Virus record (IMG/VR): IMGVR_UViG_3300032770_000002
Coordinates: 166,254 to 230,253 of that record
Length of the DNA stretch: 64,000 nt
Direction: 5' to 3' (one strand)
The position numbers and the translations under genes are program-made. Shown one piece after another: positions 12,681 through 59,645 of the stretch (the stretch's first letter is position 1; each line of letters opens with the position of its first letter). The notes under the pieces are model-generated. The model did not search any database and was not told the origin of the DNA. It saw only the letters and a program-made list of their open reading frames with translations.

Positions 12681-13769
12681 ATGATACGGATTGACAACGC
12701 GCCTGTTCCAAACGTGGTCTCGGACCGCAAACTGGGCCTTGAGATCGAGATTGATCTCGGCAACAATGGGGACCTCAGCGACCTTCCAGACATTCAAGGC
12801 TGGATCAAAAAGGGTGACGGCTCGCTCACGCACGGCTACGAATACACGTTCAACGGACCGTGCACACCGTCAACATCGAAGGAACGGTGTGAACGATTCT
12901 GTCAGTCGATTAAAGATGTGAACGTTCACCGCTCTGGCGGCTTTCACGTTCATGTCCAGGGCAACAACTATTCACACGAGGACGCATACAACCTTTGCTT
13001 GATTTACACGAAATTCCAGGACGTCATCAACAAGCTTGTGGCGCCTTCTCGAGTCAGCAACACCTACTGCGAAGCCTATTCGTGGACGTCACTCCGACAT
13101 CACACTCCGGCGTCATTCGCCCAGGCCTACAATTTGACGCCGCTTGTCAGCAGTCGTGGCTCCGCGAAAAACGTGGCCAACCGCTATCGGGCAGTCAACA
13201 CGAACATGCTAGCTTGCCGTGACGAGGCCGACCGCAGCATTGAATTTCGACAGGGCAGTGTCAGCAAGCGATTTGGCGTGGTCTACGGGTGGCCTTGCTT
13301 CCTTGCGGCATTGACTGAGTTGGCCCAGTGCAAAGACCTCTTCGACGAAGTCCTTAGTGCGCGGTCCATTCAACTTCGCGACCTCTTGGCCGTGCTTCAC
13401 GCCTGGGAGTCCAAGTCCGGTTCAACGGGCGTCGCCGACTGGGTGGAGTGGCGATACAATTACCTGAATCAGAAGCCTGACGACGCTGAACTTCGCCTCG
13501 CCTTGGAAGCCATCGCTGAGAAGCCAATCGGTCTTTATGGCCTGTCTCGCAAGATCGACATCAACCTGGCCGTGACAAAGCGGATCATTGATGACCTCTT
13601 GGCCAAGGGCCTCATCTTCAAGCGGGCCAACTCGACAGCTTATGTCACGTCCTATGAGTTTAAGGCTGAGGCCGACCTGAAGCAGATGATTGAGGCTTTG
13701 AAGAGCCGAGCGGCCAGTCTTACACCGCCTCCGCCAATGCCGGCCACCCTGCCTCCGCCACAAACATGA
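12681..13769 (+). CDS. putative amidoligase (COOH-NH2 ligase) 1
   Basis: LGLEIEI, DGSL..GYE, SGGFHVHV, NTYC, RYRAVN, SIEFRQ; possible C-terminal HTH and Pro-rich tail. Confidence 0.8.
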   Translation: MIRIDNAPVPNVVSDRKLGLEIEIDLGNNGDLSDLPDIQGWIKKGDGSLTHGYEYTFNGPCTPSTSKERCERFCQSIKDVNVHRSGGFHVHVQGNNYSHEDAYNLCLIYTKFQDVINKLVAPSRVSNTYCEAYSWTSLRHHTPASFAQAYNLTPLVSSRGSAKNVANRYRAVNTNMLACRDEADRSIEFRQGSVSKRFGVVYGWPCFLAALTELAQCKDLFDEVLSARSIQLRDLLAVLHAWESKSGSTGVADWVEWRYNYLNQKPDDAELRLALEAIAEKPIGLYGLSRKIDINLAVTKRIIDDLLAKGLIFKRANSTAYVTSYEFKAEADLKQMIEALKSRAASLTPPPPMPATLPPPQT

Positions 13770-13975
13770 CGACGCTTACCCACGAACAATTCGAAGAATA
13801 CATCAAGGACCCGCTGGCCGCTGACGCTAAAGTGCGCAAGTGGTGTGACCTGCCGGAGGATCGCTACTACACTGTCTCGGTCTGGCCAATGCCGGGGATC
13901 GTTCGGCCCACCAATGTCCACCGGCCGTTGCCGCCAAAAAGATCTCCAAGTCCAATCAGAGTTGAAAATTATTAA
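13766..13975 (+). CDS. hypothetical protein
   Basis: 69-aa ORF coupled by ATGA. Confidence 0.5.
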   Translation: MTTLTHEQFEEYIKDPLAADAKVRKWCDLPEDRYYTVSVWPMPGIVRPTNVHRPLPPKRSPSPIRVENY

Positions 13976-13978
13976 GCC

Positions 13979-14239
13979 ATGCCTGATTTCATCAAGCCTA
14001 ACATCGTCGGTCGGCACTGGGCCACGCACAGCTTTAAGCACGAGAGCACGCAAATTTACCTCTGCGAGAGCTACGATCCAGCTACGGGCTACAACATGAC
14101 GAACGTCAGCGACCCGACTGACAAACACTGCATTTCAGAGCGGGCCCCAAATCGAACTTGGTGGCCGGCTGAAGACCGCGGCGAACACTGGTGGATTGAA
14201 CAGTGGTGCCGTAAAATCCCAAAGCGTAGAATCCTATGA
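13979..14239 (+). CDS. hypothetical protein
   Basis: 86-aa ORF in a co-directional run. Confidence 0.5.
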   Translation: MPDFIKPNIVGRHWATHSFKHESTQIYLCESYDPATGYNMTNVSDPTDKHCISERAPNRTWWPAEDRGEHWWIEQWCRKIPKRRIL

Positions 14240-14769
14240 TGATTATCGTTGACGTTGAGTCTGACGGGCCCTGTCCTGTTGACTATTCAATGGTGTGTTT
14301 CGGTGCCGTCGTGGTTGAAGACACCAGTCGCACATTTTTCGGTCGAACGGCCCCGTTGCCTGGCGCAAAGTGGGACCCACAGGCCCTAGCAGTTAGTGGT
14401 CACACGCGCGAAGAGCACCTAACTTTTATGCATCCTGAAACCACGATGCTCGGGTTTGAAATGTGGCTGACTAGCTTGGGCAAGACCAAGTATCAGTTTA
14501 TCTCGGATAACCCGGCCTTTGATTGGCAGTGGATCAATTACTACTTCCACCACTTTGTCGGGCATAACCCATTCGGCTTTTCAGCAAGACGCATTGGCGA
14601 TTTCTATGCCGGGCTTGTCAAGAATTGGCGGTGCGCCAATGACTGGAAGAGCCTGCGTGTAACTGAGCACACGCACCACCCGGTCGATGACGCAAAAGGA
14701 AACGCTGAAGCGTTAATGGCGATGGCCCACAAGTATTCAGCGAAGCTGCTTAAGGTGGAGTCCACGTGA
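14236..14769 (+). CDS. DEDDh 3'-5' exonuclease (RNase AS-like)
   Basis: VDVESDGP, NPAFDW, THHPVDDA. Confidence 0.82.
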   Translation: MMIIVDVESDGPCPVDYSMVCFGAVVVEDTSRTFFGRTAPLPGAKWDPQALAVSGHTREEHLTFMHPETTMLGFEMWLTSLGKTKYQFISDNPAFDWQWINYYFHHFVGHNPFGFSARRIGDFYAGLVKNWRCANDWKSLRVTEHTHHPVDDAKGNAEALMAMAHKYSAKLLKVEST

Positions 14770-15631: not shown

Positions 15632-15651
15632 CGTTTGCTACTTAAACTACC

Positions 15652-16002
15652 ATGACAGAATTGTTGACAGGCCGATCACGGCGAGGTTCAGAACCTTGGC
15701 TAGGTGTCGACCTTGACGCTACTTTGGCCACCCACAAAGAGGGCTCTGGCATTGATTCCATCGGTGAGCCAGTGCCTGGCATGCTTGAGAAGGTTAAGCG
15801 CGCATTGCGGGCCGGACGCAAGGTGAAGGTCTTCACCGCGCGAGCGGGTGACCCTAGGCAAATTCCGCTCATTCAGCAGTGGACAGTCAAACATGGGCTT
15901 GGAAAGCTCGAAGTGACCAACGAAAAAGACGAGAACTGTGAAGAGATTTGGGACGACCGTGCCAAGAGCGTGGTTCCTAACAAAGGACGCTTTGCCAACT
16001 AG
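15652..16002 (+). CDS. HAD-superfamily phosphatase-like protein
   Basis: GVDLDATLA (DxDxT), VFTAR, K...WDDRA. Confidence 0.7.
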   Translation: MTELLTGRSRRGSEPWLGVDLDATLATHKEGSGIDSIGEPVPGMLEKVKRALRAGRKVKVFTARAGDPRQIPLIQQWTVKHGLGKLEVTNEKDENCEEIWDDRAKSVVPNKGRFAN

Positions 16003-16006
16003 ATTT

Positions 16007-17143
16007 ATGAGTGAAGAGAACCAACAGGTGCCGGAATTTGACGTTCTAACTCCAGACATTCCACTGCCGCAAGTCGTGGCGAGGCAGGAAATTGCGGATG
16101 AACGGAAGGGAGCGTTTCGATTCAGCTTTATCGGGTCTGGCCAGGGTGGCGGGAGAATTGCGGCGACATTCCGCGCCCTGGGCTACAAGCGCGTTTGCGC
16201 GATCAACACGGCGCGTCAGGACCTGGCGTCGCTCCCAGCCGACGTTAAGAAACTCGTTATCGGCGATGGAGAAGGAGGTGCTGGCAAAGACCCAGCCGTG
16301 GCGAAGGCAGCGTTTGATAAAAACGCTGAAAATGTCCTAGACCTGATGCGGGCGTCATTTGGCCAAGTGTATGACCGAACAATCATCTGTGTTGGGGCCG
16401 GCGGTGGAACTGGCGCTGGAACGGTGATCGGCCTTGTCGACAAAGCGCGTGAGCTTCAGGTTGCCAGCAAGTGTCCGACTGACAAGGTCGGCGTCATCGT
16501 TGCCCTGCCCAAGGTGACCGAAGGCCGGCGTCCAAGCATCAACGCTCACACCGTCTTGTTATCATTGGTCGCCTACGTTGAACAGGGCTTTGTCTCACCG
16601 CTTATCGTTCTTGACAACGAGCGAATGAGCTCACTCTATCCTGGGCTCGCGATCGATCCATTCTGGGACACGGCCAATCAAAGCGTCTGTCGGCTGTTTG
16701 ACCTCTTCAACATGATCTGCGTTCAAAATTCGACATACACCGCGTTCGACCCGGCTGATTACAAGTCGATCCTCGACTCAGGCCTGATCGTCTTTGGGGC
16801 CACGCCCGTCGCCAACTGGTCGGAGGCCGGCCAAATCAGCTCCGCACTGCGAGACAACTTGAAGAAAAACATTCTTGCAGGAGGTGTCAACCTGTCAACT
16901 GGAACGGTCGCCGCGGCAATCGTTATTGCTGGAAAGAGCGTCTTAAGCCAAGTGCCGCACGAGCACCTCGACCAGGCCTTCGATCAATTGACAAGGTTGT
17001 TGAAAACAAACAGCATGGTGCACCGTGGCATCTACAGCGGAAACAAGGACTCCATGGCCATTTACACCGCAATTGGCGGCCTGGCCGCACCGACTGAGAA
17101 GCTGGACGAGCTGGCCAAAATCGGCGGGATAAGCGGTAAATAA
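16007..17143 (+). CDS. tubulin/FtsZ-family GTPase (PhuZ/TubZ/CetZ-like)
   Basis: IGSGQGGGRIA, AINTA, GAGKDP, GAGGGTGAG signature, LDNE, FDPADY (T7 loop); start ATG 16007. Confidence 0.9.
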   Translation: MSEENQQVPEFDVLTPDIPLPQVVARQEIADERKGAFRFSFIGSGQGGGRIAATFRALGYKRVCAINTARQDLASLPADVKKLVIGDGEGGAGKDPAVAKAAFDKNAENVLDLMRASFGQVYDRTIICVGAGGGTGAGTVIGLVDKARELQVASKCPTDKVGVIVALPKVTEGRRPSINAHTVLLSLVAYVEQGFVSPLIVLDNERMSSLYPGLAIDPFWDTANQSVCRLFDLFNMICVQNSTYTAFDPADYKSILDSGLIVFGATPVANWSEAGQISSALRDNLKKNILAGGVNLSTGTVAAAIVIAGKSVLSQVPHEHLDQAFDQLTRLLKTNSMVHRGIYSGNKDSMAIYTAIGGLAAPTEKLDELAKIGGISGK

Positions 17144-17237: not shown

Positions 17238-17239
17238 AT

Positions 17240-17440: not shown

Positions 17441-17455
17441 ATCAAAAATAATCTA

Positions 17456-21487: not shown

Positions 21488-21772
21488 GTGAAGACGCTCA
21501 ATTTGCAAGTCGGTGCGATGTGCGGCATGCCAAGCCAGACGTGCCTCATGTCCAAGAAAAATCGTGAAGCTCTTCAACTTGACGTCAACGGCCTGGTCGT
21601 TGTGCGGTCCAATGACCAAGACACCTCGGTGGTTCGACGCATCCTTAAGGCTCCAAACATCCCGCAAAAGGACGCCTTCGTGTTCTTGTCACCTGACGAC
21701 CTAAACTTGCTCAATGTCAACATTGCAGACAACGTCGAGCTCAGCCAAGACACCGAGGGAGTGGAGACTTAG
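21488..21772 (+). CDS. hypothetical protein
   Basis: ORF, start reassigned to the GTG after the promoter. Confidence 0.55.
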   Translation: MKTLNLQVGAMCGMPSQTCLMSKKNREALQLDVNGLVVVRSNDQDTSVVRRILKAPNIPQKDAFVFLSPDDLNLLNVNIADNVELSQDTEGVET

Positions 21773-22544
21773 CGACTTTCTTTTAAACGAAACCGAAGTG
21801 GCCTATCTGACGTGTTTGGCTAACGTCATGGACAATGGAAAACCGACCGGTCCAAGGGGCCAGCAAACGCGTGAAGTCTTAAACGCGTCATTCAAAATCA
21901 GGCACCCATCTTCAGCCCCAATTCGAACGTGTGACCTAGAACGGAACAAGGTCATTGCGGAGTATACCCACAAGGAGATGGAGCTTTATCTTAGCGGTTC
22001 GAATAGCGTCAGTGACTTTGCAAAGGCAAGCCAATTCTGGAAGAAAATTGCCAACCCAGATGGGACCATCAATTCGGCCTACGGTTATTTGATTTGGCAC
22101 GAGAAAAGCTGTGGTGACCCAACAATGGAGGTCCCACATTTTGAACCAGGACGGATGAATGGAAGTTTGGCCATGCGGACTCCGTGGGAGTGGGCCCGCA
22201 ATTCCATGCTTCAAGATAAGGACACCAGACAAGCATTCCTTCGGTTTAGCCTGCCACGTCACCAGTGGGTCGGCAACCGCGACCAAGTCTGCACGATGCA
22301 CGGTCACTTTGTCATCCGCGACGACAAGCTGAACTTCTCCATCGTGATGCGGTCAAATGATTGTTTTAAGGGCCTCGTCTATGACCTTCCGTTTTTCATT
22401 AAGCTCATGGAATTGATGGCCGACGAGCTGAAGCCGACTTATCCAAATCTCCAAGTTGGCGAGTATTTTCACCTCGCCCACAGTCTCCACATCTACGAGT
22501 CAGACATCCCAAAGATCTTGAAGATGCTAGGCAGTTCTGCTTAG
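21714..22544 (+). CDS. thymidylate synthase homologue, probable dCMP (hydroxy)methylase type
   Basis: NSAYG, DTRQA, DQVCT (catalytic Cys), MRSNDCFKGLVYD (Asp at the E. coli ThyA N177 position), HSLHIYE; start uncertain. Confidence 0.8.
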   Translation: MSTLQTTSSSAKTPREWRLSDFLLNETEVAYLTCLANVMDNGKPTGPRGQQTREVLNASFKIRHPSSAPIRTCDLERNKVIAEYTHKEMELYLSGSNSVSDFAKASQFWKKIANPDGTINSAYGYLIWHEKSCGDPTMEVPHFEPGRMNGSLAMRTPWEWARNSMLQDKDTRQAFLRFSLPRHQWVGNRDQVCTMHGHFVIRDDKLNFSIVMRSNDCFKGLVYDLPFFIKLMELMADELKPTYPNLQVGEYFHLAHSLHIYESDIPKILKMLGSSA

Positions 22545-23058: not shown

Positions 23059-23086
23059 TTTACAAACCTCAGAAGTGTGGTATATT
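23059..23086 (+). promoter_or_regulatory. class 1 promoter, leaderless
   Basis: TTTACA-N16-TATATT; ATG at 23093. Confidence 0.85.
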
Positions 23087-23092: not shown

Positions 23093-23281
23093 ATGAGTGA
23101 TGCACTTCGAGACAAAAATGGACGTGCCATCGGTTACGTGACCGAGGACAGCAGCCGCAAAACGGTCCGTGACGTCAACGGCCGGCCTCAAGGCAGCTAC
23201 GACTCACGAGACAACGCAACTCGCGATAAAAATGGGCGCGTGACCGGATACGGTGACCAGACATTCGGCTTTCTTCGATAA
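23093..23281 (+). CDS. small protein with three RDxNGR repeats
   Basis: LRDKNGRAIG / VRDVNGRPQG / TRDKNGRVTG. Confidence 0.7.
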   Translation: MSDALRDKNGRAIGYVTEDSSRKTVRDVNGRPQGSYDSRDNATRDKNGRVTGYGDQTFGFLR

Positions 23282-24531
23282 TGAACTTGACGACATCAGT
23301 TGGGTTTGAACTCGAGTTTAGCGGGTCAAATCTTGACCGTGTTGAACGCGAGCTTCGCTCTAAGGGGATCGACTGTCACAATTACGGCCGGTGGCGCCAC
23401 TCTGACGGCGACCTGTGGGACCTTAAGACCGACTCGTCATGTGGGTTTGAAGCCGTCAGCCCGATATTGCAGACCTATGAGGAGCTGGTTGATGCTGCTG
23501 GTGTCGGCGCCTTGATCGCCAATGTCGGTGGAACTGCGACAGAGAGGTGCGGGCTTCACGTTCACATCGGCGGCGGTGACTTCAGTTCGCTTCAACTTGA
23601 AAACGTCTTTCGATTTTTCACACGGTATGAGTTCGCCTTTTTTCTCATGGTGCCTCCGGCTAGGCGGACAAACATCTACTGCAAGCGGCTTTCACCAGCT
23701 ACGATCAACTCAATCAAGCGGGCGTCATTTCAGCGCAATGACTGGTGGATTCACACGTGGACTGACAAGAATGTCTGGCTGAATGGGCGCCGTTGGCCGG
23801 ACATCAGGACGCTTGAGTTTCGCATCATGCCCGGGTCACTCAGCCCATACTTCATCATTGGCTACGTGACGTTTCTTCAGTGCGTGATCAACACGGTCAA
23901 GGACCGAACGATTAACTGGGGCATGGCTCGCAGCAAGGATGACCGCTCGCTCTTCCAGACGATGCTTGGTCAGTCCGGATTTTATGGCCCATGGATTAGT
24001 GAAGACCTTAAGGAACTCTACCTCACCGGGCGCAAGTGGGCGATCGAGCGGTATAAGCTGGCGAACGAGTTAGTGTCGGGTTTCTTTGAAATGACGCGGG
24101 TCGTTCCTAAAATCCCGTCGGTCGACTGCCGGCCAAGTTGGGACCGTGGAGACACATCGCTCCCACAACGGACACGCCGTGTGAGGCGACGAGTGCCGGA
24201 AGTAGAGGTGCGAAGCCCCGCGTCATCTCCGCCTCCGCCATCGACGGCTTATTCACCGATTCAGCAGCCTCAGTTTATAAGCTCAACGCCTGTGGTGACG
24301 TCATTTGCTACTCAGACGACGCAGACGATGCCAGAAATTTCAATCAGCAACGCTACCACTACTTCCGGCGATTGGATTGTCTCATGGGGACAAGGAGGAA
24401 CGAGCCACTTGAACATGGGCCAAGCTTCTAGCTCAGCGGAAACAACTCCAACCGCAGAACGCAGTGAAACGACAGCAACTCCGCCGACGCCGTCGTCCGA
24501 ATCTACACCGTCTGAATCTCAGGGCTCGTAG
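23281..24531 (+). CDS. putative amidoligase 2
   Basis: VGFELEF, TDSSCGFEAVSP, CGLHVHIG, NIYC, TLEFR; long S/T/P-rich tail. Confidence 0.82.
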   Translation: MNLTTSVGFELEFSGSNLDRVERELRSKGIDCHNYGRWRHSDGDLWDLKTDSSCGFEAVSPILQTYEELVDAAGVGALIANVGGTATERCGLHVHIGGGDFSSLQLENVFRFFTRYEFAFFLMVPPARRTNIYCKRLSPATINSIKRASFQRNDWWIHTWTDKNVWLNGRRWPDIRTLEFRIMPGSLSPYFIIGYVTFLQCVINTVKDRTINWGMARSKDDRSLFQTMLGQSGFYGPWISEDLKELYLTGRKWAIERYKLANELVSGFFEMTRVVPKIPSVDCRPSWDRGDTSLPQRTRRVRRRVPEVEVRSPASSPPPPSTAYSPIQQPQFISSTPVVTSFATQTTQTMPEISISNATTTSGDWIVSWGQGGTSHLNMGQASSSAETTPTAERSETTATPPTPSSESTPSESQGS

Positions 24532-24541: not shown

Positions 24542-25702
24542 ATGAGACAGGCAAAAGCTACTATCGACCAGCTGTTTGAGCGCCAGATTGATGAGATCTG
24601 GCGCCCTCCAAATCTTCCCGATAAGGAGCCTGAAGACATCTTTCAAGACACCATGGACCGCGCTTACGCGGGCTATGAGCAAAAGGCTGGTCGACAGCAG
24701 GTTAATCGGGCATTCGACAACCGTGAAAAGCAGTCCGGTCATCGTAATTTTCTAGACGCTTTGGCGGAACCCGAACAACTTGCAGTCGTCTTCGGGAACC
24801 TCAACTATCAAGTTGAAAATGGCGGATTCACACAGTGGATCGACAACAATTATTACGAAGACACGATCGACAGGCTGCGTGAATTTGGTGACCGATTCAA
24901 GGAACGATTTCCAGTTTTAGGCCGGGTGTTAGCGATCATCGATGAGTTGGAGGAGTATGCCTCGAATTTTGGCGAGGACATGACCCTGCCCAAGTTGACC
25001 GGCCGCGAGTGGGATGAGGACATCGGCAACGCCTTTTACGATGAGGATTGGGACAGGCTCAACGAGCTTACGGGCGGAACTGACATCGACAAGCGCAGGG
25101 TTGACGACGCCACGGAGGATGTGCTCAAGGACATGATCGAACTTTCGGTCGATGAGTCAGAGACCGAAGGCCAGTTTTACTGGGCGATTAAGCGGTCACG
25201 CCTGCATGGCCACGATGAGGAGATTGAGCGTTCGAGCATGACATATGCTGACGAGGACCAGGCTTACGAAGCGGGTGAAAAGAGAGCTGAGGAACTCCAA
25301 AAAGAAGCCATGGAGGAGCAGAATGAGCTCTACGACTTAGCCCGTGAGGAAGCAAAGAATGAACTGGAAAAGGAGCTGCGTGAGGGTCTTGACAAAGACG
25401 TTCATCGGACTTTTGAACGAGCCGACCACGACTATTACGCGATTCACACCGAGGTTCTTGACGCAATTTCTAGCATCCTTCGCACGGAATATAACGTCAA
25501 TTCGTCATTCAGTCAATTTTTCACTCAGGCCATGGGCAAGGTCCGTCAGTCACTTAAACGCGTGGCCGATGTAGCTCGACAAAAACTCTCGTCCGGACTT
25601 GGACGGGCAGCTGGAGCATTGACTCGAGCTTCACAGAAAGTTCGTCCGGGAGAATCTGCGGAAGAATCTGCGAAAGACTCGATCTGTCGACTCATCTCAT
25701 AG
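24542..25702 (+). CDS. acidic protein with DMP19/DUF4375-like motif
   Basis: LNYQVENGGFTQWIDNNY...ADHDYY; D/E-rich middle. Confidence 0.6.
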   Translation: MRQAKATIDQLFERQIDEIWRPPNLPDKEPEDIFQDTMDRAYAGYEQKAGRQQVNRAFDNREKQSGHRNFLDALAEPEQLAVVFGNLNYQVENGGFTQWIDNNYYEDTIDRLREFGDRFKERFPVLGRVLAIIDELEEYASNFGEDMTLPKLTGREWDEDIGNAFYDEDWDRLNELTGGTDIDKRRVDDATEDVLKDMIELSVDESETEGQFYWAIKRSRLHGHDEEIERSSMTYADEDQAYEAGEKRAEELQKEAMEEQNELYDLAREEAKNELEKELREGLDKDVHRTFERADHDYYAIHTEVLDAISSILRTEYNVNSSFSQFFTQAMGKVRQSLKRVADVARQKLSSGLGRAAGALTRASQKVRPGESAEESAKDSICRLIS

Positions 25703-26021: not shown

Positions 26022-26440
26022 AAAGCATCGTCAAATTCGCCTGGCTAAGCACCGGGTTGACGTCGTTGCTCACAGGTCTCGTTACGGGTCTTATGGGAAA
26101 GTTCAACGCTAAAATGGTGGCCAGCATATTAAGCTTGCTGACCATTGCCATCGCCACGTTTTTTGCAATGGGCTACATCTTCAACCAGCCAAATCTTTAT
26201 ACGTGGCCGACGAATGCCACCCCCGTGGCTCTTCCAACGTCGATCATCTTCATCATTGTCGGTTCATCCGTGTTCATTCTGTCAGCCAGAACGCACGGGG
26301 AAGTATATCATCGCTTTGATGTCGAGGACGATCGGTTGGACCTCGTTGAGAGGCGGGTCAATCGCGTTGAATCGATGGTCGCTGAATTACGCCATCAGAA
26401 TGGAAATGGCGAAGTCAGTTCGCGATCACACGATACTTGA
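26018..26440 (+). CDS. multi-TM membrane protein (holin-like?)
   Basis: About three hydrophobic segments and a charged C-terminus. Confidence 0.5.
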   Translation: MKSIVKFAWLSTGLTSLLTGLVTGLMGKFNAKMVASILSLLTIAIATFFAMGYIFNQPNLYTWPTNATPVALPTSIIFIIVGSSVFILSARTHGEVYHRFDVEDDRLDLVERRVNRVESMVAELRHQNGNGEVSSRSHDT

Positions 26441-26996
26441 ACTTAAACCAGTCCGAAGAGTCTTGTTCGGGACTTCCAAGCGGCCGATAAGGAGTGCCTT
26501 TTCGTTTCAACACAACGCCCTCGAACTCAGATCGAAGCGTGTGCTCAGTGAGCAGCTCCCCAAGCAGCCAGTCCTCTGTCACTGAAAACATCCACGGAAG
26601 TCCAAGTTGTCCACTGATCTTGACAGCCGCGGCTTGGCGCACGTCCGGTCCTTGGTCGAGGAGTGAAAAGCCGTCGACGCAGAGAGCCTCAAACGGGTAG
26701 AATTTTGACTTGTAGACCTCACCGTCGAGGACCATCAGTTTGCTGACGTGTGTGAAGTCTTTGGCGTTGAGCGCCGGGTGACGAAATTGTTCGGCTCGTC
26801 GATTGATGATTTGAACCTGTCCATTGATGACGGCCAAGACGGCACGGTCACCGTTGAGCTTTCGCTGGACGACGTCGCCGTTTTTCATGCGCGTCATCAG
26901 TTCTGTAATCTTTGACGCCGTCAATTCTTGGCCTTTGGTTGGCCGCATCGGGAACAGGGGAAAGCTCAGTCCTGGGACGATCAGAGTTCGATTCAT
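26415..26996 (-). CDS. ATP-dependent ligase / capping-type nucleotidyltransferase domain only
   Basis: KLNGDR (motif I), LDGEV (III), FEAL (IIIa), EGVVLK (IV), WFKFK (V); no OB domain. Confidence 0.75.
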   Translation of the reverse strand: MNRTLIVPGLSFPLFPMRPTKGQELTASKITELMTRMKNGDVVQRKLNGDRAVLAVINGQVQIINRRAEQFRHPALNAKDFTHVSKLMVLDGEVYKSKFYPFEALCVDGFSLLDQGPDVRQAAAVKISGQLGLPWMFSVTEDWLLGELLTEHTLRSEFEGVVLKRKGTPYRPLGSPEQDSSDWFKFKYRVIAN

Positions 26997-27002
26997 GGCT
27001 CA

Positions 27003-27030
27003 AATATAACGACCGGCCGTAATTTGTAAA
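27003..27030 (-). promoter_or_regulatory. class 1 promoter, leaderless (minus strand)
   Basis: TTTACA-N16-TATATT, then tgagcc-ATG (26996). Confidence 0.85.
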
Positions 27031-27044
27031 CAGAAAAATAATTG

Positions 27045-27073
27045 TTTACAAATTATGGAACTTGTGGTATATT
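27045..27073 (+). promoter_or_regulatory. class 1 promoter, leaderless
   Basis: TTTACA-N17-TATATT, then ccaccc-ATG (27080). Confidence 0.85.
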
Positions 27074-27079
27074 CCACCC

Positions 27080-27691
27080 ATGAACATCGCCACGATCGAT
27101 TTTCAGATGACGGTAAAGTCCAACGGGTGGTCGAGCGACAAGCTCAAATACGCCGACCTGGCCAAGGACGCTTCCATGCTTGTCGACATGCTCGACGACC
27201 TCGACGCGGACCTGGAAGTCATCACGTTCATCTTCAACGTCAGCATGACATACGATCAGGTCATGCGCATGTTCAGGCTTTTTGCCAAGGGCCGAAACCA
27301 CATGGCATACCACTTCGGCCGATCCTTGCAGGCGACGTCGGCATACGACCCTGATTACAGCCGTGACGGTCAGACGCTGGTTTTCCGGGACATCTGCAAG
27401 GTTGAAAATGCGTCGTGGGACGGGAACAAATCTGCTCCAGTCACAATCACGTTCGAGGACATCCTCAAAATTCAAAACCAACAGCTTCGCGGGTTTACGA
27501 TCGTGGCCAACCTGATTCGATTGGCCAACCTCATTGCGTGGTCCGTGGTGAATGACGTCAAGCTCTCACCAAAACCGGTGACGATGAAGACGTGGAACAC
27601 GATCACCATCTGGGGCGAGAGCCCGTGGACGAAAAAAGTCGAAGGTGTTGGAGCGGTCCCGGACGACGATGACCTTTACGCCGAGGAGTAA
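27080..27691 (+). CDS. hypothetical protein
   Basis: ORF starting 6 nt after the -10 element. Confidence 0.7.
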   Translation: MNIATIDFQMTVKSNGWSSDKLKYADLAKDASMLVDMLDDLDADLEVITFIFNVSMTYDQVMRMFRLFAKGRNHMAYHFGRSLQATSAYDPDYSRDGQTLVFRDICKVENASWDGNKSAPVTITFEDILKIQNQQLRGFTIVANLIRLANLIAWSVVNDVKLSPKPVTMKTWNTITIWGESPWTKKVEGVGAVPDDDDLYAEE

Positions 27692-31542: not shown

Positions 31543-31682
31543 GTTTTATCTATCAGTCAAAACAATCCCCGGCGGTCCATTTCGCTCACGGAGCGCGTGA
31601 TTGAGCCGCTAAAATACGCTGTTTGACGGTCTTTAAACGTCACTGTTACGCCCCAGGCGTCAAAACTTTTTACATTTTTTTG

Positions 31683-31711
31683 TTTACAAATGGCAGGAGA
31701 CGTGATATATT
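31683..31711 (+). promoter_or_regulatory. class 1 promoter, leaderless
   Basis: TTTACA-N17-TATATT, then ccctcc-ATG (31718). Confidence 0.85.
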
Positions 31712-31717
31712 CCCTCC

Positions 31718-33718
31718 ATGACAACGACCACAGTTGAGATTGAGAAGCTCCTCAAGTGGAGTGAGCCTCAGATTCGTCAGACGTCGCGCGGCATCCGCTG
31801 CTTGCGCACGGCCGAACCGACCCAAGAATTTCGCGCCATTTGGAAGACCAACAGGCAGGTGCTCAAGGACGCTGGCCTTGGTTGGACCGAGTATCAGGGT
31901 GTCTGGACCGTCAATTGGTGGACTGACCCGCCGAAGGACTTCATGGAAGAGACCGCCGCGAAGGTCGCCGCCTCTTACAAAAAGGTCAGCGACATCACCG
32001 TCCCATCTCCCGACGGCCTCGCATACATGCCCTACCAGCTGGCGGCCATCGAGTTTGCGCAAGGGCGCAACGGCACGCTGTTTGGCGACGAGATGGGCCT
32101 GGGCAAGACCATCGAGGCCATTGGCGTCATCAACAACGACGCGACGATCAAAAATGTCCTGGTCATCTGTCCGTCTCGCCTCAAGATCAATTGGTCCCGT
32201 GAGTTGAACAAGTGGCTTACTCGGCCGATGACTGTCGGCTTGACCAACGGCATTCTTCCCGCCACGAACGTGGTCATCATCGCTTATACGTCTTGCGCCA
32301 AGTTTGAGGCCGAGATCCTGGCCCGCAAGTGGGACCTCGTTGTGATGGACGAAATTCACTACATCAAAAACCCTGGTGCGCAGCGCACTCGGACGGTCAC
32401 CAACATCGCCAAGGAGACGGCGCGCAAGATCGGCATGACTGGCACCCCGATTCAGAATCGCATTGGCGAGCTGTTCACCGTCCTCAACCTCCTTGACCCG
32501 GTCACCTGGAATGACCGCAACAAGTTTTTCCGCCGCTACGTCTACTACGCGAATGAAACTCGCCTCGCTGAACTGCAGCGCCTGCTTCGGACGAGCGTGA
32601 TGATTCGCCGGATGAAGAAGGACGTGCTGACTGAGCTCCCGGCGAAGCGCCGCCAGACCATCATCATCGGCAAGGAAGGTTACGAGAATGCCCTCGCCCA
32701 CGAGCGCGAAGTTATGGCCAAGTTTGAGAAGCAGCTTCTCGAAAGCCACGTCGAGCTCGAGTTAGCCAAGGCCAGTGGCAATGAGGCTGAATATAAGTCA
32801 GCGCTTGCCCGCCTTCGCAGCGCCAACACCGTTTGCTTCGCTGAGATTTCGAAGGCCCGCCACGAGACGGCCAAGGCCAAAGTCCCCGACGTCATCGAGC
32901 AGGTCAAAGGGTTCCTTGACGCAACGAGCGAGAAGATCGTCGTCTTCGCCCATCACGTTGACGTGCTCGAGGCCATTCACGCTGCGTTTCCTGGCTCTGG
33001 GCTTATCCACGGCCAAGTCAGTCAACAGGCTGGTCAAGCCGCTCTGGATCGCTTTCAGACCGACCCTGACTGCCGCGTGCTGGTCAGCTCCATCCTCGCT
33101 GGTGGACTTGGGCTGAACATGACCGCGGGCAGCGTGGCCATCTTTGCCGAACTCGATTGGGTTCCCACAAACTTGGACCAAGCTGAAAGCCGCCTGCATC
33201 GCAAAGGCCAAGAGCTGTCCACGCTGTTTGCCTACGTCATCCTCGAAGACTCGCTCGACGGGCGGATGATTGACATCCTCCTTGAGAAGCTGGCCATCAT
33301 TGACTCAGCCATGGGCGATGAGAAAGACGGCGACGAGCCGCTGTTCCCGAACCTGTCCGGAAACACGGACAAGTCGGCAGTCACCATCACGATGAAGGAA
33401 TATCGTGAGACGACCCTCGTGATGCCCGAGGCCCAGATGAAGGCCATTCACACCGGTCTGCGAATGCTCGCGCGGGTCTGTGACGGAGCCGTTGAGCTGG
33501 ATGGCCAGGGCTTCAACAAGCTTGACACGGCGGTTGGGCATCGGCTGGCCACGCTCAATTATCTCAGCCCGCGGCAAGCCCTGCTAGGTCAGAAGCTGGT
33601 CAATCGCTATCGTGGTCAGCTCCCGGCTGACTTGGTCGCCGTGGCTAAGGGAACACCAGCTACGCAGCCTGAAACTTCCGTGGCGCAGCCCACGCAAACC
33701 TACGACTGTGGGCTATGA
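31718..33718 (+). CDS. SNF2-family helicase (HARP/SMARCAL1-like)
   Basis: DEMGLGKT, DEIH, TGTPIQN, RRMKKDVLTELPAK, GLGLNM, QAESRLHRKGQ. Confidence 0.92.
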   Translation: MTTTTVEIEKLLKWSEPQIRQTSRGIRCLRTAEPTQEFRAIWKTNRQVLKDAGLGWTEYQGVWTVNWWTDPPKDFMEETAAKVAASYKKVSDITVPSPDGLAYMPYQLAAIEFAQGRNGTLFGDEMGLGKTIEAIGVINNDATIKNVLVICPSRLKINWSRELNKWLTRPMTVGLTNGILPATNVVIIAYTSCAKFEAEILARKWDLVVMDEIHYIKNPGAQRTRTVTNIAKETARKIGMTGTPIQNRIGELFTVLNLLDPVTWNDRNKFFRRYVYYANETRLAELQRLLRTSVMIRRMKKDVLTELPAKRRQTIIIGKEGYENALAHEREVMAKFEKQLLESHVELELAKASGNEAEYKSALARLRSANTVCFAEISKARHETAKAKVPDVIEQVKGFLDATSEKIVVFAHHVDVLEAIHAAFPGSGLIHGQVSQQAGQAALDRFQTDPDCRVLVSSILAGGLGLNMTAGSVAIFAELDWVPTNLDQAESRLHRKGQELSTLFAYVILEDSLDGRMIDILLEKLAIIDSAMGDEKDGDEPLFPNLSGNTDKSAVTITMKEYRETTLVMPEAQMKAIHTGLRMLARVCDGAVELDGQGFNKLDTAVGHRLATLNYLSPRQALLGQKLVNRYRGQLPADLVAVAKGTPATQPETSVAQPTQTYDCGL

Positions 33719-36604: not shown

Positions 36605-36612
36605 TCAACGTT

Positions 36613-37179: not shown

Positions 37180-37423
37180 GCGGATACTCGCGCAAGAGGC
37201 GGCCCAGTTCCTGGATTACCTTAAAAGCGTCCCCGTTGCGCCCAGTCTCTTCCATCCACAAGGCCACGGCATTCCTCAGCCCTTCGCTGCCAAGAGTCTT
37301 CCAGAGTGAATGCAGGTTGTCCTGCCAGTCATATTGGCCGACCTCGTCCTGGATGAACTCGGCCGCCAGGTCCTCTGGGTCTTCAACTTCAAAGGCAGAC
37401 TCAATCAGTTTCTTTGCCAGCAC
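37061..37423 (-). CDS. hypothetical protein (N-terminus LAKKLIESAFE)
   Basis: TAGTTA 4 nt upstream; convergent overlap with the neighbour. Confidence 0.5.
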   Translation of the reverse strand: MLAKKLIESAFEVEDPEDLAAEFIQDEVGQYDWQDNLHSLWKTLGSEGLRNAVALWMEETGRNGDAFKVIQELGRLLREYPLTRWQQMIRQRVPQPVPRRGQIVRRQIVAPSKLGPGEPV

Positions 37424-37474
37424 GCCGTAACTAATGCGAGTTTACACACGAGCCGAAGTTCTGTATCTTGTCAT

Positions 37475-50085: not shown

Positions 50086-50092
50086 TTTTTTG

Positions 50093-50121
50093 TTTACAAA
50101 TTACGGTTGTTGTGGTATAGT
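50093..50121 (+). promoter_or_regulatory. class 1 promoter, leaderless
   Basis: TTTACA-N17-TATAGT, then gtggcc-ATG (50128). Confidence 0.85.
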
Positions 50122-50127
50122 GTGGCC

Positions 50128-50349
50128 ATGATGACCGACGACATTCTTGACGGAGCAGAACTTGCTATTGATGACGGAAGCGCCAGGGAAGACTTGGACA
50201 GGCTGGAAGCCGCCGTCTCAAAGACCATCGCTGAGGACCAGTATTTCTGGGCCATTGAGATGGGCTTCAACAACACCGAAGCCTGCGCCATCGCTGACGC
50301 TGCTGTGATCGATTACAACTCGAGCTTTATCTTAGCTCGAGCCAATTGA
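50128..50349 (+). CDS. small acidic early protein
   Basis: 73 aa; about 16 D/E against 4 K/R. Confidence 0.6.
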   Translation: MMTDDILDGAELAIDDGSAREDLDRLEAAVSKTIAEDQYFWAIEMGFNNTEACAIADAAVIDYNSSFILARAN

Positions 50350-55831: not shown

Positions 55832-55846
55832 TCGAAAGAGCTTTGA

Positions 55847-57474: not shown

Positions 57475-57491
57475 ATTTTTTCAATTTTTTG

Positions 57492-57520
57492 TTTACAACT
57501 TCGGTTCGTTGTGGTATATT
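57492..57520 (+). promoter_or_regulatory. class 1 promoter
   Basis: TTTACA-N17-TATATT; ATG at 57534. Confidence 0.85.
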
Positions 57521-57533
57521 CATCCCAGAGTTT

Positions 57534-58634
57534 ATGCCAAACGTTGATGAGAAACTGACATTCGGGATTGAGTTGGAAGGCGTGCGAGCCTCCTCTGAAT
57601 CGCAGGTCTTGGCCCAAATGTGGAACTTCACAAAGCGTTACGATCACTCCATCACTGACGACCACGGGCAACCGCTTCCTCGGACACTTGAAGAGGGCGG
57701 CGGCTTTGAATACATCACGCCTGTGCTGAGCGTCGATGTTCGCATGACCAACGCCGGTGAGCGATTGGCCATCAACTGGGGCACTTCACTGAATGCCATC
57801 CGCGACCTCTGTTTATGCGTCGCTCACGTCAACAAGTCGTGCGGCGTTCACATTCACCTCGGCCGCCCGGCAAGTGACAGCGTGACCCACTCGAAGTGGG
57901 AGCCAGAGCGAGTTCGGACCATGCTGACAGTCGGCATGCTCCTGGAGCCCAAGATTTTTGACGTCGTTCCTGAAAGCCGCCGTGGAAATCACCACTCGAA
58001 CTTCATTCGTTCACGATACTCCTCTGACGACATCTGCCAATTTTATCCGACTGGAAATGTGGTCGCCAGAAAGTTCGATAATCCCAAGCGGTATTGCTGG
58101 ATGAACCTCATTGAGACTCGGCGAGTGGGCAACGACACGCGTCCAGGGCGTGGTTCATCGACGGCTCTTGGAACGATCGAAATCCGGGCTCTTGGCAACA
58201 CAGCGTCTTACGACTACATCAGCGCTTGGACAGTCCTGTGGATGAAGATTGCAGCTTTCGTGGCCTACTTGCCATCATCGCTGGCCATGATGCGGTGCGT
58301 GTTTTCCGAAGAGCTTGCGTCGGACTTTGCGACACTGGCCAAGCTCAAGTCGACGGTCGACGAGAGCGTGGTGCTGCCGGCTGAACCGCCATCGCCGGCT
58401 CTGCCTCAGTTGACTCCTCAGCCAGCACCGCCGCGGCCACATCGACCGCTTCGTCGCCCGCTGAATGTGCTGGCCGAGCGTGAAGCTCGAAGAGAGCGCG
58501 CTCCACGTGAAGCTCGACAAGCTGGCATCCCGTCGCATGACGCAATTTTACGTGGGGCTGAACGGCTTGCTGAACCACAGACGCCTCAAATCCCGGCTGA
58601 AAATGACGGTCCGGTCGAGGAAAATCGTGACTGA
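57534..58634 (+). CDS. putative amidoligase 3
   Basis: FGIELEG, YDHSI, GFEYITP, SCGVHIHLG, RYCWMN, TIEIR; Pro-rich tail. Confidence 0.82.
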   Translation: MPNVDEKLTFGIELEGVRASSESQVLAQMWNFTKRYDHSITDDHGQPLPRTLEEGGGFEYITPVLSVDVRMTNAGERLAINWGTSLNAIRDLCLCVAHVNKSCGVHIHLGRPASDSVTHSKWEPERVRTMLTVGMLLEPKIFDVVPESRRGNHHSNFIRSRYSSDDICQFYPTGNVVARKFDNPKRYCWMNLIETRRVGNDTRPGRGSSTALGTIEIRALGNTASYDYISAWTVLWMKIAAFVAYLPSSLAMMRCVFSEELASDFATLAKLKSTVDESVVLPAEPPSPALPQLTPQPAPPRPHRPLRRPLNVLAEREARRERAPREARQAGIPSHDAILRGAERLAEPQTPQIPAENDGPVEENRD

Positions 58635-58644
58635 CGTTTAATTG

Positions 58645-58672
58645 TTTACAAATCGCAGAAACGTGATATATT
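58645..58672 (+). promoter_or_regulatory. class 1 promoter
   Basis: TTTACA-N16-TATATT; ATG at 58683. Confidence 0.85.
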
Positions 58673-58682
58673 AAGGACAAGT

Positions 58683-59645
58683 ATGTGTGCCATCATCTCC
58701 TGGAAAGGAAAACTTCCAAAAGGCCTGCTGACTCAGTTGCTTCTCAAGTCTGAGCGGCGTGGGCGTGACTCGACTGGCGTTGCATTTCGCTTGGCGTCAA
58801 GCACGGTGTCATATCGTCAGGCAGTTCCGGCCAATGAATTTGTCAGCGACCCTGAAAACAACAAGTTTTTGGGTGACGCTCGTCGGGCCATGAGCGGCAT
58901 TGCTCACACTCGTCGCGCCAGTCCTGGCATGCCAATTGACAACAGGAACGCACACCCGTTCCTTTATTGGCGGTATTTCTTTGCGCACAATGGCAAGATC
59001 CAAAACTGGAAGTCGTTGCAACAGCGCTTGATCGACCACTACTCTCAGGTGGCCAATTCCGCGACTGACGATGAGAGCAGGAAAAGCGCCGAGTGGTGTG
59101 TTCACTATTGCCGAAACATTCAGACCGATTCGAAGGTCCTTGGTCCATACATCCACACTGAGAACTTTTCACTGATCGAAGGGTGCATGGCCTTGGTGTG
59201 GCTTAAGGGCGACGAAGCCTTTACGCTGCGCATGGCCAAAGAGGCCACGGCCACGTCAGTCATTTGGCGATACATCGTTCCGCCGAAGGACGAGGAAATT
59301 GAGGACCACATGGTGACGATTGTCGGGTCAACTCACGAGATCATCGATGACTCGCTCAAGTCGCTGTCGAAGGTCATTGAGTATGACCGTGGCTCATTCA
59401 ACGACTTTCCTGAAGGGATCATTTACAAGATCGAGGCCAATGGCCTGAAGGAGCACAAGCGCCTTGACCAAAAGCCCGTCGCAATGGAGGACCAGTTTAC
59501 GTCCGAGGAAGTCAAGGACGAGACGCCCATTCAAGAGAATATCGGGTCGACTCCAGCTACTGGAGAACCTGGCGAGCCGCCGTCACCCAACTTTGAGTCG
59601 GCCCCGGCGCCTGAGTCAGCGACCACGACCACGAATCCTGTCTAA
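58683..59645 (+). CDS. class II (Ntn) glutamine amidotransferase
   Basis: N-terminal MC, RGRDSTG, HTRRAS, NAHPF, AHNGKI, TDS. Confidence 0.88.
   Translation: MCAIISWKGKLPKGLLTQLLLKSERRGRDSTGVAFRLASSTVSYRQAVPANEFVSDPENNKFLGDARRAMSGIAHTRRASPGMPIDNRNAHPFLYWRYFFAHNGKIQNWKSLQQRLIDHYSQVANSATDDESRKSAEWCVHYCRNIQTDSKVLGPYIHTENFSLIEGCMALVWLKGDEAFTLRMAKEATATSVIWRYIVPPKDEEIEDHMVTIVGSTHEIIDDSLKSLSKVIEYDRGSFNDFPEGIIYKIEANGLKEHKRLDQKPVAMEDQFTSEEVKDETPIQENIGSTPATGEPGEPPSPNFESAPAPESATTTTNPV

What the first reader, a model, noticed from the sequence alone, without database searches (positions are those of the whole stretch)
12681..59645. Dispersed amidoligase system: three paralogues plus an Ntn glutamine amidotransferase, all in the early regulon
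Seen: amidoligase-motif genes at 12681, 23281 and 57534 (GxExE, DxS, E, GxHxH, xExR), and a GATase at 58683. Each is the first or second gene after a class 1 promoter. All four have unrelated Pro/Ser/Thr-rich tails, and paralogue 1 has an extra HTH-like region. Established: this glutamine-synthetase-like COOH-NH2 ligase family co-occurs with class II GATases in phages, with unknown substrates. Inference: an early peptide-tagging, amidation or cell-wall-modifying system with diversified targets, linked by regulation rather than by position.
Basis: partly seen in the sequence, partly recalled or inferred. Interest (0 to 1): 0.7.

Follow-up and report, generated by a model that had tools for sequence, protein, structure and literature searches.

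The report
Expanded, scattered phage amidoligase system
An uncultured 230-kb wetland phage carries an enlarged, scattered version of a known but never-tested phage enzyme set that makes and trims glutamate-type amide bonds, and its DNA-binding-type add-on domains suggest targets near DNA rather than the cell wall.

Summary
The window has three glutamine-synthetase-fold amidoligases (12681-13769, 23281-24531, 57534-58634) and a class II Ntn amidotransferase (58683-59645). Each starts 6-195 nt after a near-consensus sigma-70-type promoter. All four have low-complexity tails, and paralogue 1 has a winged helix.

The window shows only part of the system. The 230,253-bp genome also holds three more Amidoligase_2 genes (one fused to WGR), a probable phiEco32-type ligase, a second amidotransferase and a gamma-glutamyl cyclotransferase.

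In a distant relative, orthologues of paralogues 1-3, the cyclotransferase and the amidotransferase form one operon. An amidoligase abuts the amidotransferase in all 12 related loci examined (about 9 distinct). LUZ24 has the same four families in one early cassette.

So this is an expanded, dispersed variant of a known but biochemically untested phage cassette, usually guessed to modify peptidoglycan. My best reading is a set of ATP-dependent carboxylate-amine ligases with diversified acceptors, plus enzymes specific for glutamine or gamma-glutamyl amides. WGR, winged-helix and Arg-rich modules, and a constant replication-gene context, point to DNA-proximal targets.

Substrates and timing are unproven. 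The known thymidine-hypermodification markers are absent. New variant of a known kind; moderate interest.

The parts
12646..12674 (+). Promoter of paralogue A: TTTACA, 17-nt spacer, TG-extended TATATT. The ATG starts 7 nt after the -10 hexamer, so the transcript is probably leaderless.
12681..13769 (+). Amidoligase paralogue A (362 aa). GS-like core is residues 1-225, with motifs GLEIEI 19-24, GGFHVH 86-91, SR 123-124 and IEFRQ 187-191. Winged HTH is residues 226-342 (13356-13706). Short Pro-rich tail is residues 347-362.
   Evidence: PHROG amidoligase families at 4e-12; in-genome profile; 16 orthologues with invariant catalytic set; wHTH model and PDB matches
23059..23086 (+). Promoter of the 62-aa ORF and paralogue B (16-nt spacer, TG extension).
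23093..23281 (+). Leaderless 62-aa ORF with three RDxNGRxxGY-like repeats. Its stop codon overlaps the ATG of paralogue B. It is absent at the same place in the relative L019, so membership of the system is doubtful.
   Evidence: (weak Bflower hit, E 0.002)
23281..24531 (+). Amidoligase paralogue B (416 aa). Core is residues 1-~210. Arg-rich patch QRTRRVRRRV is residues 296-305 (24166-24195). A ~100-aa Ser/Thr/Pro-rich tail starts at residue 312.
   Evidence: PF12224 at 4e-14; tail ranks 1st of 228; orthologue beside the ThyA-like gene, with the same Arg patch plus PST tail, in L019
57492..57520 (+). Promoter of paralogue C (17-nt spacer, TG extension). The ATG lies 13 nt after the -10 hexamer.
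57534..58634 (+). Amidoligase paralogue C (366 aa). Core is residues 1-~275. The Pro-rich then Arg/Glu-rich disordered tail starts at residue 282 (58377).
   Evidence: 28 orthologues with 30 invariant columns; AF2 core pLDDT above 90; best PDB and AFDB matches are GS, YbdK/GCS2, EgtA and gamma-glutamyl-amine synthetases
58645..58672 (+). Promoter of the GATase gene, lying in the 48-nt gap after paralogue C.
58683..59645 (+). Stand-alone class II (Ntn) glutamine amidotransferase-fold protein (320 aa). Features: Cys2, R26, D29, HTRR 75-78, N103-G104, D149. A conserved EDxF(T/S)S motif at residues 269-277 is followed by a variable acidic/PST tail.
   Evidence: PF13522; alignment to the GlmS N-terminal domain; 97 homologues with the invariant set; adjacent to an amidoligase in all 12 related loci examined

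Best explanation
Composition. The genes belong to one phage-encoded system for making and trimming glutamate/glutamine-type amide bonds. It is an enlarged, scattered version of the phiEco32/LUZ24-type early cassette.

Proposed chemistry. Each glutamine-synthetase-fold ligase (six Amidoligase_2 and one probable type-2) would use ATP to activate a carboxylate as an acyl-phosphate and join it to an amine. By analogy with every characterised member of the fold, the carboxylate is the gamma-carboxyl of glutamate or of a C-terminal Glu. Two other enzyme types are both specific for glutamine or gamma-glutamyl amides: the stand-alone Ntn amidotransferase-fold proteins and the gamma-glutamyl cyclotransferase. 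They would either feed ammonia to a ligase or remove and trim the gamma-glutamyl group.

Proposed targeting. The paralogues are old, separately conserved groups, and each is aimed at a different acceptor by its own add-on. Group D has WGR, group A a winged helix, and groups B and C have disordered tails with an Arg-rich patch. I infer that the acceptors are DNA-associated: proteins of the nucleoid or of the replication or transcription machinery, or DNA-bound amines.

Proposed timing. Transcription would be by host RNA polymerase from strong sigma-70-type promoters that give leaderless mRNAs, probably early in infection.

Shown: family and fold assignments, conserved catalytic residues, gene linkage in relatives, accessory folds, and promoter sequences and positions.

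Inferred: the glutamyl chemistry, the role of the amidotransferase, the target class and the timing.
For: - Families, residues and fold. The nearest solved folds are GS, YbdK/GCS2, GshF, gamma-glutamylmethylamide synthetase and 1-naphthylamine GS. All of these activate a glutamate gamma-carboxyl.
- The GATase keeps the Cys1, Arg, Asn-Gly and Asp set that binds a glutamine or gamma-glutamyl moiety.
- A GGACT is in the genome, next to the probable type-2 ligase.
- One operon, B-GGACT-A-C-GAT, in the distant relative L006.
- An amidoligase abuts the GAT-II in all 12 related loci examined.
- LUZ24 has PF14395, PF12224, PF13522 and PF06094 in one early cassette.
- A viral protein cluster fuses GAT-II to Amidoligase_2 (automatic labels only).
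- WGR scores above its Pfam cut-off and is conserved in group D. The winged helix is conserved in group A. Arg-rich patches recur in the B and C tails.
- The context is always PolA, DnaB, RNR, ThyA-like, ligase, gp32 and RecA genes.
- Promoter proximity: P = 6e-5.
Against: - There is no biochemical datum for any member of Amidoligase_2, and no solved structure is detectable by sequence.
- Fold matches are weak (TM about 0.33), so the glutamate-binding pocket could not be mapped.
- Complex prediction for C plus the GATase gave no answer, and it was run without the tails.
- A winged helix can be a dimerisation module, and WGR function in bacteria is not established.
- A GAT-II/amidoligase fusion is what a glutamine-dependent amidating enzyme would look like. 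The amidotransferase may therefore be an ammonia donor rather than a gamma-glutamyl hydrolase.
- Replication-module context may only reflect shared early timing.
- The literature favours peptidoglycan as the target (PMC5498523).
Confidence: 0.4

Rival explanations
1. Cell-wall precursor modification (the literature's hypothesis). The ligases, amidotransferase and cyclotransferase would rebuild or amidate the peptide stem of peptidoglycan precursors in the cytoplasm. This would change the cell surface and exclude superinfecting phages.
For: The same four families form the cassette called a 'peptidoglycan modification cassette' in phiEco32, LUZ24, PaP3, tf and RIO-1 (PMC5498523, PMC10580990). 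Peptidoglycan stems contain gamma-linked D-Glu, which is amidated in many bacteria by a ligase plus glutaminase pair (MurT/GatD, PMC3267633). The proteins have no signal peptides, which is compatible with action on cytoplasmic precursors.
Against: The hypothesis has never been tested. It does not explain the WGR and winged-helix modules or the Arg-rich tails. The RimK-type ATP-grasp of the classical cassette is absent here. Six or seven separately conserved ligases exceed the number of unusual bonds in a peptide stem. The genes always sit among replication genes, not lysis or envelope genes.
Confidence: 0.2
2. DNA or nucleotide hypermodification. The ligases and the amidotransferase would decorate a modified base, for example a 5-hydroxymethylpyrimidine derivative, at nucleotide or polymer level to evade restriction.
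For: Paralogue B lies beside a ThyA-like gene here and in L019. That enzyme has Asp at the position of TS Asn177, as dCMP hydroxymethylases do (inference from knowledge of the TS family). A PurZ-like gene lies next to paralogue A. Lee et al. 2021 found amidoligase and amidotransferase genes beside thymidine-hypermodification genes in viral contigs (PMC8989533). The WGR and winged-helix modules would fit a DNA substrate.
Against: The defining enzymes of the known pathway are absent from this complete genome: 5-HMUDK (PF18748, PF18723) and the amino-acid:DNA transferase (PF18724). M6 pathway proteins find nothing. In L006 the operon is not next to a ThyA-like gene. The cassette also occurs in small phages not known to carry modified bases.
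Confidence: 0.15
3. Small-molecule metabolism. The ligases would gamma-glutamylate or amidate free amines or acids (polyamines, amino acids, thiols). The amidotransferase-fold enzyme and GGACT would recycle them. The model is PuuA/PuuD or EgtA/EgtC, remodelling host nitrogen, polyamine or redox pools.
For: The best structural neighbours include amine gamma-glutamylating GS-like enzymes and EgtA. GGACT acts on free gamma-glutamylamines (family knowledge). Characterised stand-alone class II amidotransferase-fold proteins such as EgtC are gamma-glutamyl-amide hydrolases (my knowledge).
Against: It does not explain the nucleic-acid-type modules or the long disordered tails. Enzymes of small-molecule metabolism rarely need six anciently diverged paralogues with targeting domains.
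Confidence: 0.15
4. No joint system. The paralogues would be independent enzymes that merely share ancestry and an abundant promoter.
For: The genes are up to about 200 kb apart. About 26 such promoters serve many unrelated genes. Complex prediction gave no support (not evidence either way).
Against: Orthologues form a single operon in L006. The AL-GAT adjacency holds in all 12 related loci examined. The same families are clustered in LUZ24. A natural GAT-amidoligase fusion cluster exists.
Confidence: 0.05

Closest known systems
phiEco32 / LUZ24 / PaP3 / tf / RIO-1 early cassette (type-2 COOH-NH2 ligase, Amidoligase_2, GAT-II, ATP-grasp, GGACT), predicted by Iyer et al. 2009 and called a 'peptidoglycan modification cassette'
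   Same: Same four protein families (PF14395-like, PF12224, PF13522, PF06094). Early or replication-module location, just upstream of primase/helicase in LUZ24. Function untested.
   Different: Here there are six Amidoligase_2 paralogues instead of one, two GAT-II genes and no RimK-type ATP-grasp. The genes are scattered over the genome, many with their own promoter. Added WGR, winged-helix and disordered Arg-patch/PST tails are not described for the cassette. The carrier is a ~230-kb jumbo-phage clade, not ~45-kb podoviruses.
GS-fold ligase plus amidotransferase-fold hydrolase pairs acting on gamma-glutamyl amides (EgtA/EgtC of ergothioneine synthesis; PuuA/PuuD of putrescine use)
   Same: A GS/GCS-fold ATP-dependent ligase is paired with a glutaminase-fold enzyme. 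EgtA is among the structural neighbours. The GATase is stand-alone, like EgtC.
   Different: No sequence-level orthology. The partners here are phage-specific families with unknown acceptors. PuuD is class I, not class II.
Glutamine-dependent amidating enzymes (class II amidotransferases such as AsnB; MurT/GatD for peptidoglycan iso-Glu amidation)
   Same: N-terminal Cys glutaminase with a full glutamine-binding set, partnered with, and in some viruses fused to, an ATP-dependent ligase.
   Different: The synthetase partner is GS-fold, not PP-loop or Mur-ligase fold. No channel or complex could be shown. The co-conserved GGACT has no place in a simple amidation scheme.
Pupylation (PafA ligase / Dop deamidase, GS-fold)
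   Same: GS-fold enzymes join a Glu gamma-carboxyl to protein lysines, with a deamidating or trimming partner. This is a model for protein tagging by this fold.
   Different: No Pup-like tag gene was identified or searched for. The trimming enzymes here have Ntn and GGACT folds. There is no proteasome link.

Membership tests
Amidoligase_2 (PF12224), GS-like COOH-NH2 ligases | Profile match above the curated Pfam cut-off | tested here: met
   B scores 53.4 bits against a cut-off of 22. The three out-of-window paralogues score 82, 36 and 32 bits. C itself scores 16.3 bits, below the cut-off, and A has no Pfam hit. Both join through PHROG amidoligase families (A, 4e-12), the in-genome profile and orthologues that carry PF12224.
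Amidoligase_2 (PF12224), GS-like COOH-NH2 ligases | Conserved metal, ATP and acyl-phosphate residue set (ExE, E, HxH, R, ExR) | tested here: met
   Invariant in all six paralogues: G, E, E, H, R, N, E, R. Invariant within 28 C orthologues and 16 A orthologues. Paralogue D has Thr in place of the second His.
Amidoligase_2 (PF12224), GS-like COOH-NH2 ligases | Glutamine-synthetase / GCS fold | tested here: met
   AF2 model of C has core pLDDT above 90. Top PDB and AFDB hits are all GS, YbdK/GCS2, GshF, EgtA or gamma-glutamyl-amine synthetases, at E about 3e-4 and probability 0.9-1.0, but TM is only about 0.3.
Amidoligase_2 (PF12224), GS-like COOH-NH2 ligases | ATP-dependent carboxylate-amine ligase activity | not testable with these tools
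No member with a solved structure was found by sequence.
Class II (Ntn) glutamine amidotransferase | Nucleophilic Cys directly after the initiator Met | tested here: met
   MCAII at the N-terminus. Cys2 is nearly invariant in 43 homologues. The second copy has MCAII as its probable start.
Class II (Ntn) glutamine amidotransferase | Glutamine-binding and oxyanion residues (equivalents of GlmS Arg26, Arg73, Asn98-Gly99, Asp123) | tested here: met
   R26, HTRR 75-78, N103-G104 and D149 are invariant. They align with the GlmS glutaminase domain 1xff.
Class II (Ntn) glutamine amidotransferase | Coupled synthase domain or subunit that receives ammonia | tested here: inconclusive
   No fused synthase domain: 320 aa, with a core of about 265 aa. 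An amidoligase gene is always adjacent, and fused forms exist in other viruses. Complex prediction gave no answer.
phiEco32/LUZ24-type early amidoligase cassette | Full component set: type-2 ligase, Amidoligase_2, GAT-II, GGACT, ATP-grasp | tested here: inconclusive
   Amidoligase_2, GAT-II and GGACT are present. The type-2 ligase is probable: PF14395 at E 0.006 and Atlas score 0.93 to PF14395 clusters, but hhalign against A1 was negative. The RimK-type ATP-grasp was not found. Other ATP-grasp families were not searched.
phiEco32/LUZ24-type early amidoligase cassette | Genes contiguous in one cassette | tested here: not met
   In this genome the ten genes lie at eight places between 26 kb and 226 kb. 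The cassette is contiguous in the relative L006 and in LUZ24.
Thymidine hypermodification clusters (5-HMUDK plus amino-acid:DNA transferase) | Presence of 5-hmdU DNA kinase and ADDT/aGPT-Pplase | tested here: not met
   PF18748, PF18723 and PF18724 give no match at E <= 1 in the complete genome. The accessions were verified on phage M6 proteins.
Pupylation-like protein tagging (PafA/Dop) | A small disordered tag protein ending in Gly-Gly-Gln/Glu | not tested
   No search for a Pup-like ORF was made. The only small ORF linked to a ligase (23093-23281) is not conserved in L019.

The most novel reading that the evidence does not exclude
These phages might encode a writer/eraser toolkit for gamma-glutamyl-type (or amidating) modification of DNA-associated macromolecules. 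Six or seven GS-fold 'writers' would each be steered by its own reader-like module (WGR for DNA ends or nicks, a winged helix, Arg-rich disordered tails). Two Ntn hydrolases and a cyclotransferase would act as 'erasers' or maturases. The system would be deployed early to reprogramme the host nucleoid, replication or transcription machinery, or to decorate phage DNA. That would be the first assigned function for the Amidoligase_2 family, and it would be a bacterial-virus counterpart of the predicted eukaryotic 'chromatin protein amino-acid ligases'.
Probability: 0.15. Interest if true: 0.85.

Novelty: new variant of a known kind. Interest (0 to 1): 0.5.

Why it matters
The amidoligase / GAT-II / gamma-glutamyl-cyclotransferase cassette has been seen in many phages since 2009, and no substrate has ever been shown. 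The usual label, 'peptidoglycan modification, superinfection exclusion', is a guess.

This jumbo-phage clade offers new handles on the problem:
- The ligase has split into at least four anciently separate groups, each conserved across relatives and each with a different targeting module.
- Two of those modules are nucleic-acid-type folds.
- The genes are dispersed here, but their orthologues form one operon in a relative.

This gives testable predictions. The modules should bind DNA or DNA-bound partners. The products should be gamma-glutamyl or amide adducts on such partners rather than on muropeptides.

If the predictions hold, the result would assign a function to a widespread orphan enzyme family. 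It would also reveal a new way in which phages chemically rewrite host or viral macromolecules.

Tried and rejected
- Close relatives in GenBank phages: megablast and blastn found none. tblastn found only distant single-copy amidoligases and GAT-II genes.
- IMG/VR search with paralogue A: nothing found.
- Complex prediction of the C core with the GATase core: score 0.00, 'no answer', so it is not evidence.
- Sequence search of solved structures with the six-paralogue profile: no hit.
- Known thymidine-hypermodification route: M6 pathway proteins found nothing by phmmer. ADDT and 5-HMUDK families are absent.
- RimK ATP-grasp: absent.
- The seventh ligase (genome 81984-82817): hhalign against the paralogue profile was negative and Pfam is sub-threshold. 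The Atlas feature and structure search supports PF14395/GCS2. I keep it as 'probable'.
- The 62-aa repeat ORF before paralogue B as a precursor peptide or tag: rejected as a conserved partner, because L019 has no such ORF between the ThyA-like gene and the B orthologue.
- The 178-aa zinc-finger protein after the GATase as a conserved partner: not similar to the gene at that position in L006.
- RNA evidence for timing: the only public run holding this sequence is one wetland DNA metagenome.
- Counting paralogues in whole related metagenome contigs: those records are not held.
- Extra promoters near the two out-of-window paralogues E and F: none found.

Full report
**Where the window lies.** The window is the last 64 kb (166254-230253) of a 230,253-bp IMG/VR virus record with 127-bp direct terminal repeats, rated complete. 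The only public run holding it is a wetland DNA metagenome. No GenBank phage is similar at the DNA level.

**The observation: genes.** ORFs are at the stated coordinates.
- Paralogue B (23281-24531) matches Pfam Amidoligase_2 at 4e-14.
- Paralogue A (12681-13769) has no Pfam hit but matches three PHROG 'amidoligase' families at about 1e-11.
- Paralogue C (57534-58634) is sub-threshold in Pfam (16 bits against a cut-off of 22). A profile built from A, B and a third genomic copy recruits it at 1e-7, and most of its 28 orthologues carry PF12224.
- The protein at 58683-59645 matches GATase_6 above the cut-off and begins Met-Cys.

**The observation: residues.** An alignment of all six genomic paralogues leaves G, E and E (GxExE), H (of GxHxH), R, N, and E and R (ExR) invariant. 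The orthologue sets of C and A keep the full pattern.

**The observation: promoters.** Four near-consensus promoters lie at 12646-12674, 23059-23086, 57492-57520 and 58645-58672. Each is TTTACA, 16-17 nt, TG, TATATT, with a T-rich upstream stretch. I found them by repeat search and by an independent consensus scan.

**The observation: tails.** B, the GATase and A rank 1st, 2nd and 5th of 228 proteins for P+S+T in the last 40 residues. C's tail is Pro/Arg/Glu-rich.

**The observation: HTH.** Residues 226-342 of A fold as a winged helix (pLDDT 92). All leading PDB matches are MarR/ArsR/SmtB-type.

**The set is larger than the window.**
- The genome has three more Amidoligase_2 genes. The copy at 26189-27217(-) has an N-terminal WGR domain scoring above its Pfam cut-off. 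The other two are at 88423-89535 and 100080-101141.
- A second GAT-II lies at about 36372-37474(-).
- A GGACT/AIG2 gamma-glutamyl cyclotransferase lies at 81248-81799.
- The next gene, 81984-82817, has its own promoter and is probably a phiEco32-type 'type 2' COOH-NH2 ligase. Support: a weak PF14395 hit, and an Atlas feature score of 0.93 to PF14395 clusters with structural matches to GCS2. Against: a negative profile-profile comparison with the paralogue alignment.

**Are they one system?**
- The GATase has 97 metagenomic homologues, several on 110-222-kb contigs.
- In the nearest relatives the order PolA, DnaB, C orthologue, GATase, NAD ligase is kept. Three or four amidoligase genes lie within 21 kb.
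- The B orthologue sits right after the ThyA-like gene and RNR in L019.
- A tree of 30 amidoligases resolves well-supported groups A, B, C and D (WGR). Each has members in several phages. E and F form a pair seen only in this genome. Paralogues share only 21-27% identity with each other, against 40-77% with their orthologues. The duplication is therefore old.
- In the distant relative L006 (143-kb contig), members of B, A and C, a GGACT and the GATase lie in one operon, in the order B-GGACT-A-C-GAT.
- In all 12 related loci examined (about 9 distinct, since L026, L028 and L029/L030 repeat others), an amidoligase gene directly abuts the GATase gene. GGACT is nearby in three.
- Phage LUZ24 carries PF14395, PF12224, PF13522 and PF06094 genes in one early cassette, just before its primase/helicase.
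- An Atlas cluster of ~933-aa viral proteins combines GATase_6 (100% of members) with Amidoligase_2 (88%), which is a natural fusion (automatic labels).
- The dispersed genes here are therefore parts of one system.

**Regulation.**
- About 26 copies of the promoter occur in the genome, 13 of them in this window.
- Six of the nine clear system genes start within 600 nt of one, against 29 of 272 genes overall (hypergeometric P = 6e-5).
- 'Early' is an inference from the sigma-70-like consensus. There are no RNA data.

**What the proteins tell us.**
- The AF2 model of C has a confident core. Its nearest solved and predicted structures are glutamine synthetase, YbdK/GCS2, GshF, EgtA, gamma-glutamylmethylamide synthetase and 1-naphthylamine GS. 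TM-scores are low (about 0.3), so this shows the fold, not the pocket. From established knowledge, all these enzymes activate the gamma-carboxyl of glutamate with ATP.
- The GATase keeps the residues that hold a glutamine or gamma-glutamyl moiety. It has no synthase domain.
- GGACT enzymes cleave gamma-glutamyl-amines to 5-oxoproline (family knowledge).
- All three enzyme types thus point to glutamate/glutamine-centred amide chemistry.
- Two sub-models remain open. In one, the GATase supplies ammonia to a ligase; the adjacency and the fusion favour this. In the other, it hydrolyses gamma-glutamyl amides, as the stand-alone class II protein EgtC does (my knowledge); the co-conserved GGACT favours this. 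Complex prediction gave no answer.

**Targets.**
- The accessory modules are conserved within groups. WGR is present in D orthologues of two other phages. The winged-helix region is present in A orthologues, including L006.
- The tails of B and C orthologues vary in length from 12 to 223 aa. Many carry an Arg-rich patch (10 of 28 for C). The B orthologue in L019 repeats the Arg-patch-then-PST layout.
- GATase homologues end in a conserved EDxF(T/S)S motif, followed by a variable acidic/PST tail.
- The genes always lie among replication and nucleotide-metabolism genes.
- These features fit DNA-proximal acceptors better than peptidoglycan, which is the literature's untested guess (PMC5498523, PMC10580990).
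- The DNA-hypermodification idea has some support. Amidoligases and amidotransferases have been seen beside thymidine-modifying genes (PMC8989533). The neighbouring ThyA-like enzyme has Asp where thymidylate synthase has Asn177. However, the defining 5-HMUDK and ADDT families are absent.

**Verdict.** This is an expanded, dispersed and module-decorated variant of the known phiEco32/LUZ24-type amidoligase cassette, in a clade of uncultured jumbo phages. The chemistry, the targets and the timing remain to be shown.

Noticed in passing
window-wide, e.g. 12669-12683, 27044-27090, 31682-31720, 50092-50130, 60574-60611; genome-wide list: For 15 of 26 promoters the ATG starts 6-7 nt after the -10 hexamer, and for 22 of 26 within 11 nt. 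That leaves no room for a Shine-Dalgarno site, so the first genes of these units are probably translated from leaderless mRNAs. This is unusual for a phage with perfect sigma-70-type promoters and may hint at the host.
   Followed up: partly
window 11134-12126 (-): A 329-aa adenylosuccinate-synthetase homologue (PF00709 at 8e-18; PHROG 1211 at 2.5e-41, the PurZ-type family) lies next to paralogue A. The phage may replace adenine with 2-aminoadenine. MazZ and DatZ partners were not searched for.
   Followed up: partly
window 21714-22544 (+): A divergent thymidylate-synthase homologue (PF00303, 57 bits) has RSNDCFKGLVYD, with Asp at the position of TS Asn177, as in dCMP hydroxymethylases. It probably acts on dCMP (hydroxymethylase or methylase). 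Its position next to the B-group amidoligase is conserved in L019.
   Followed up: partly
window 12097-12663 (+): A circularly permuted YpsA (SLOG) domain protein (PF12694 at 4e-36) lies between the PurZ-like gene and paralogue A. The promoter of A lies inside its 3' end.
   Followed up: no
window 15938-17143 (+): A tubulin/TubZ-like GTPase (PF00091 and the TubZ C-terminal domain), as in phages that position their DNA with a tubulin spindle.
   Followed up: no
window 24542-25702 (+): A 386-aa protein with a DMP19-like (DNA-mimic) domain (PF14300 at 2e-6) lies immediately downstream of paralogue B.
   Followed up: no
window 23093-23281 (+): A 62-aa leaderless ORF made of three RDxNGRxxGY-like repeats (weak '4-fold beta flower' hit). 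Its stop codon overlaps the start of paralogue B. It is not present at that place in the relative L019.
   Followed up: partly
window 27003-27074: Two copies of the promoter sit back to back on opposite strands. Each is followed 6 nt later by an ATG, giving divergent leaderless units.
   Followed up: no
genome 61370-61396 (-), outside the window: Three GTTTACAA boxes lie in tandem within 35 nt, without the usual -10 element. This may be a regulator binding site, since the box TTGTTTACAA is nearly palindromic.
   Followed up: no
window 59648-60184 (+) and 60609-62729 (+): A DksA/TraR-type zinc-finger protein follows the GATase. An NAD-dependent DNA ligase follows with its own leaderless promoter.
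   Followed up: no
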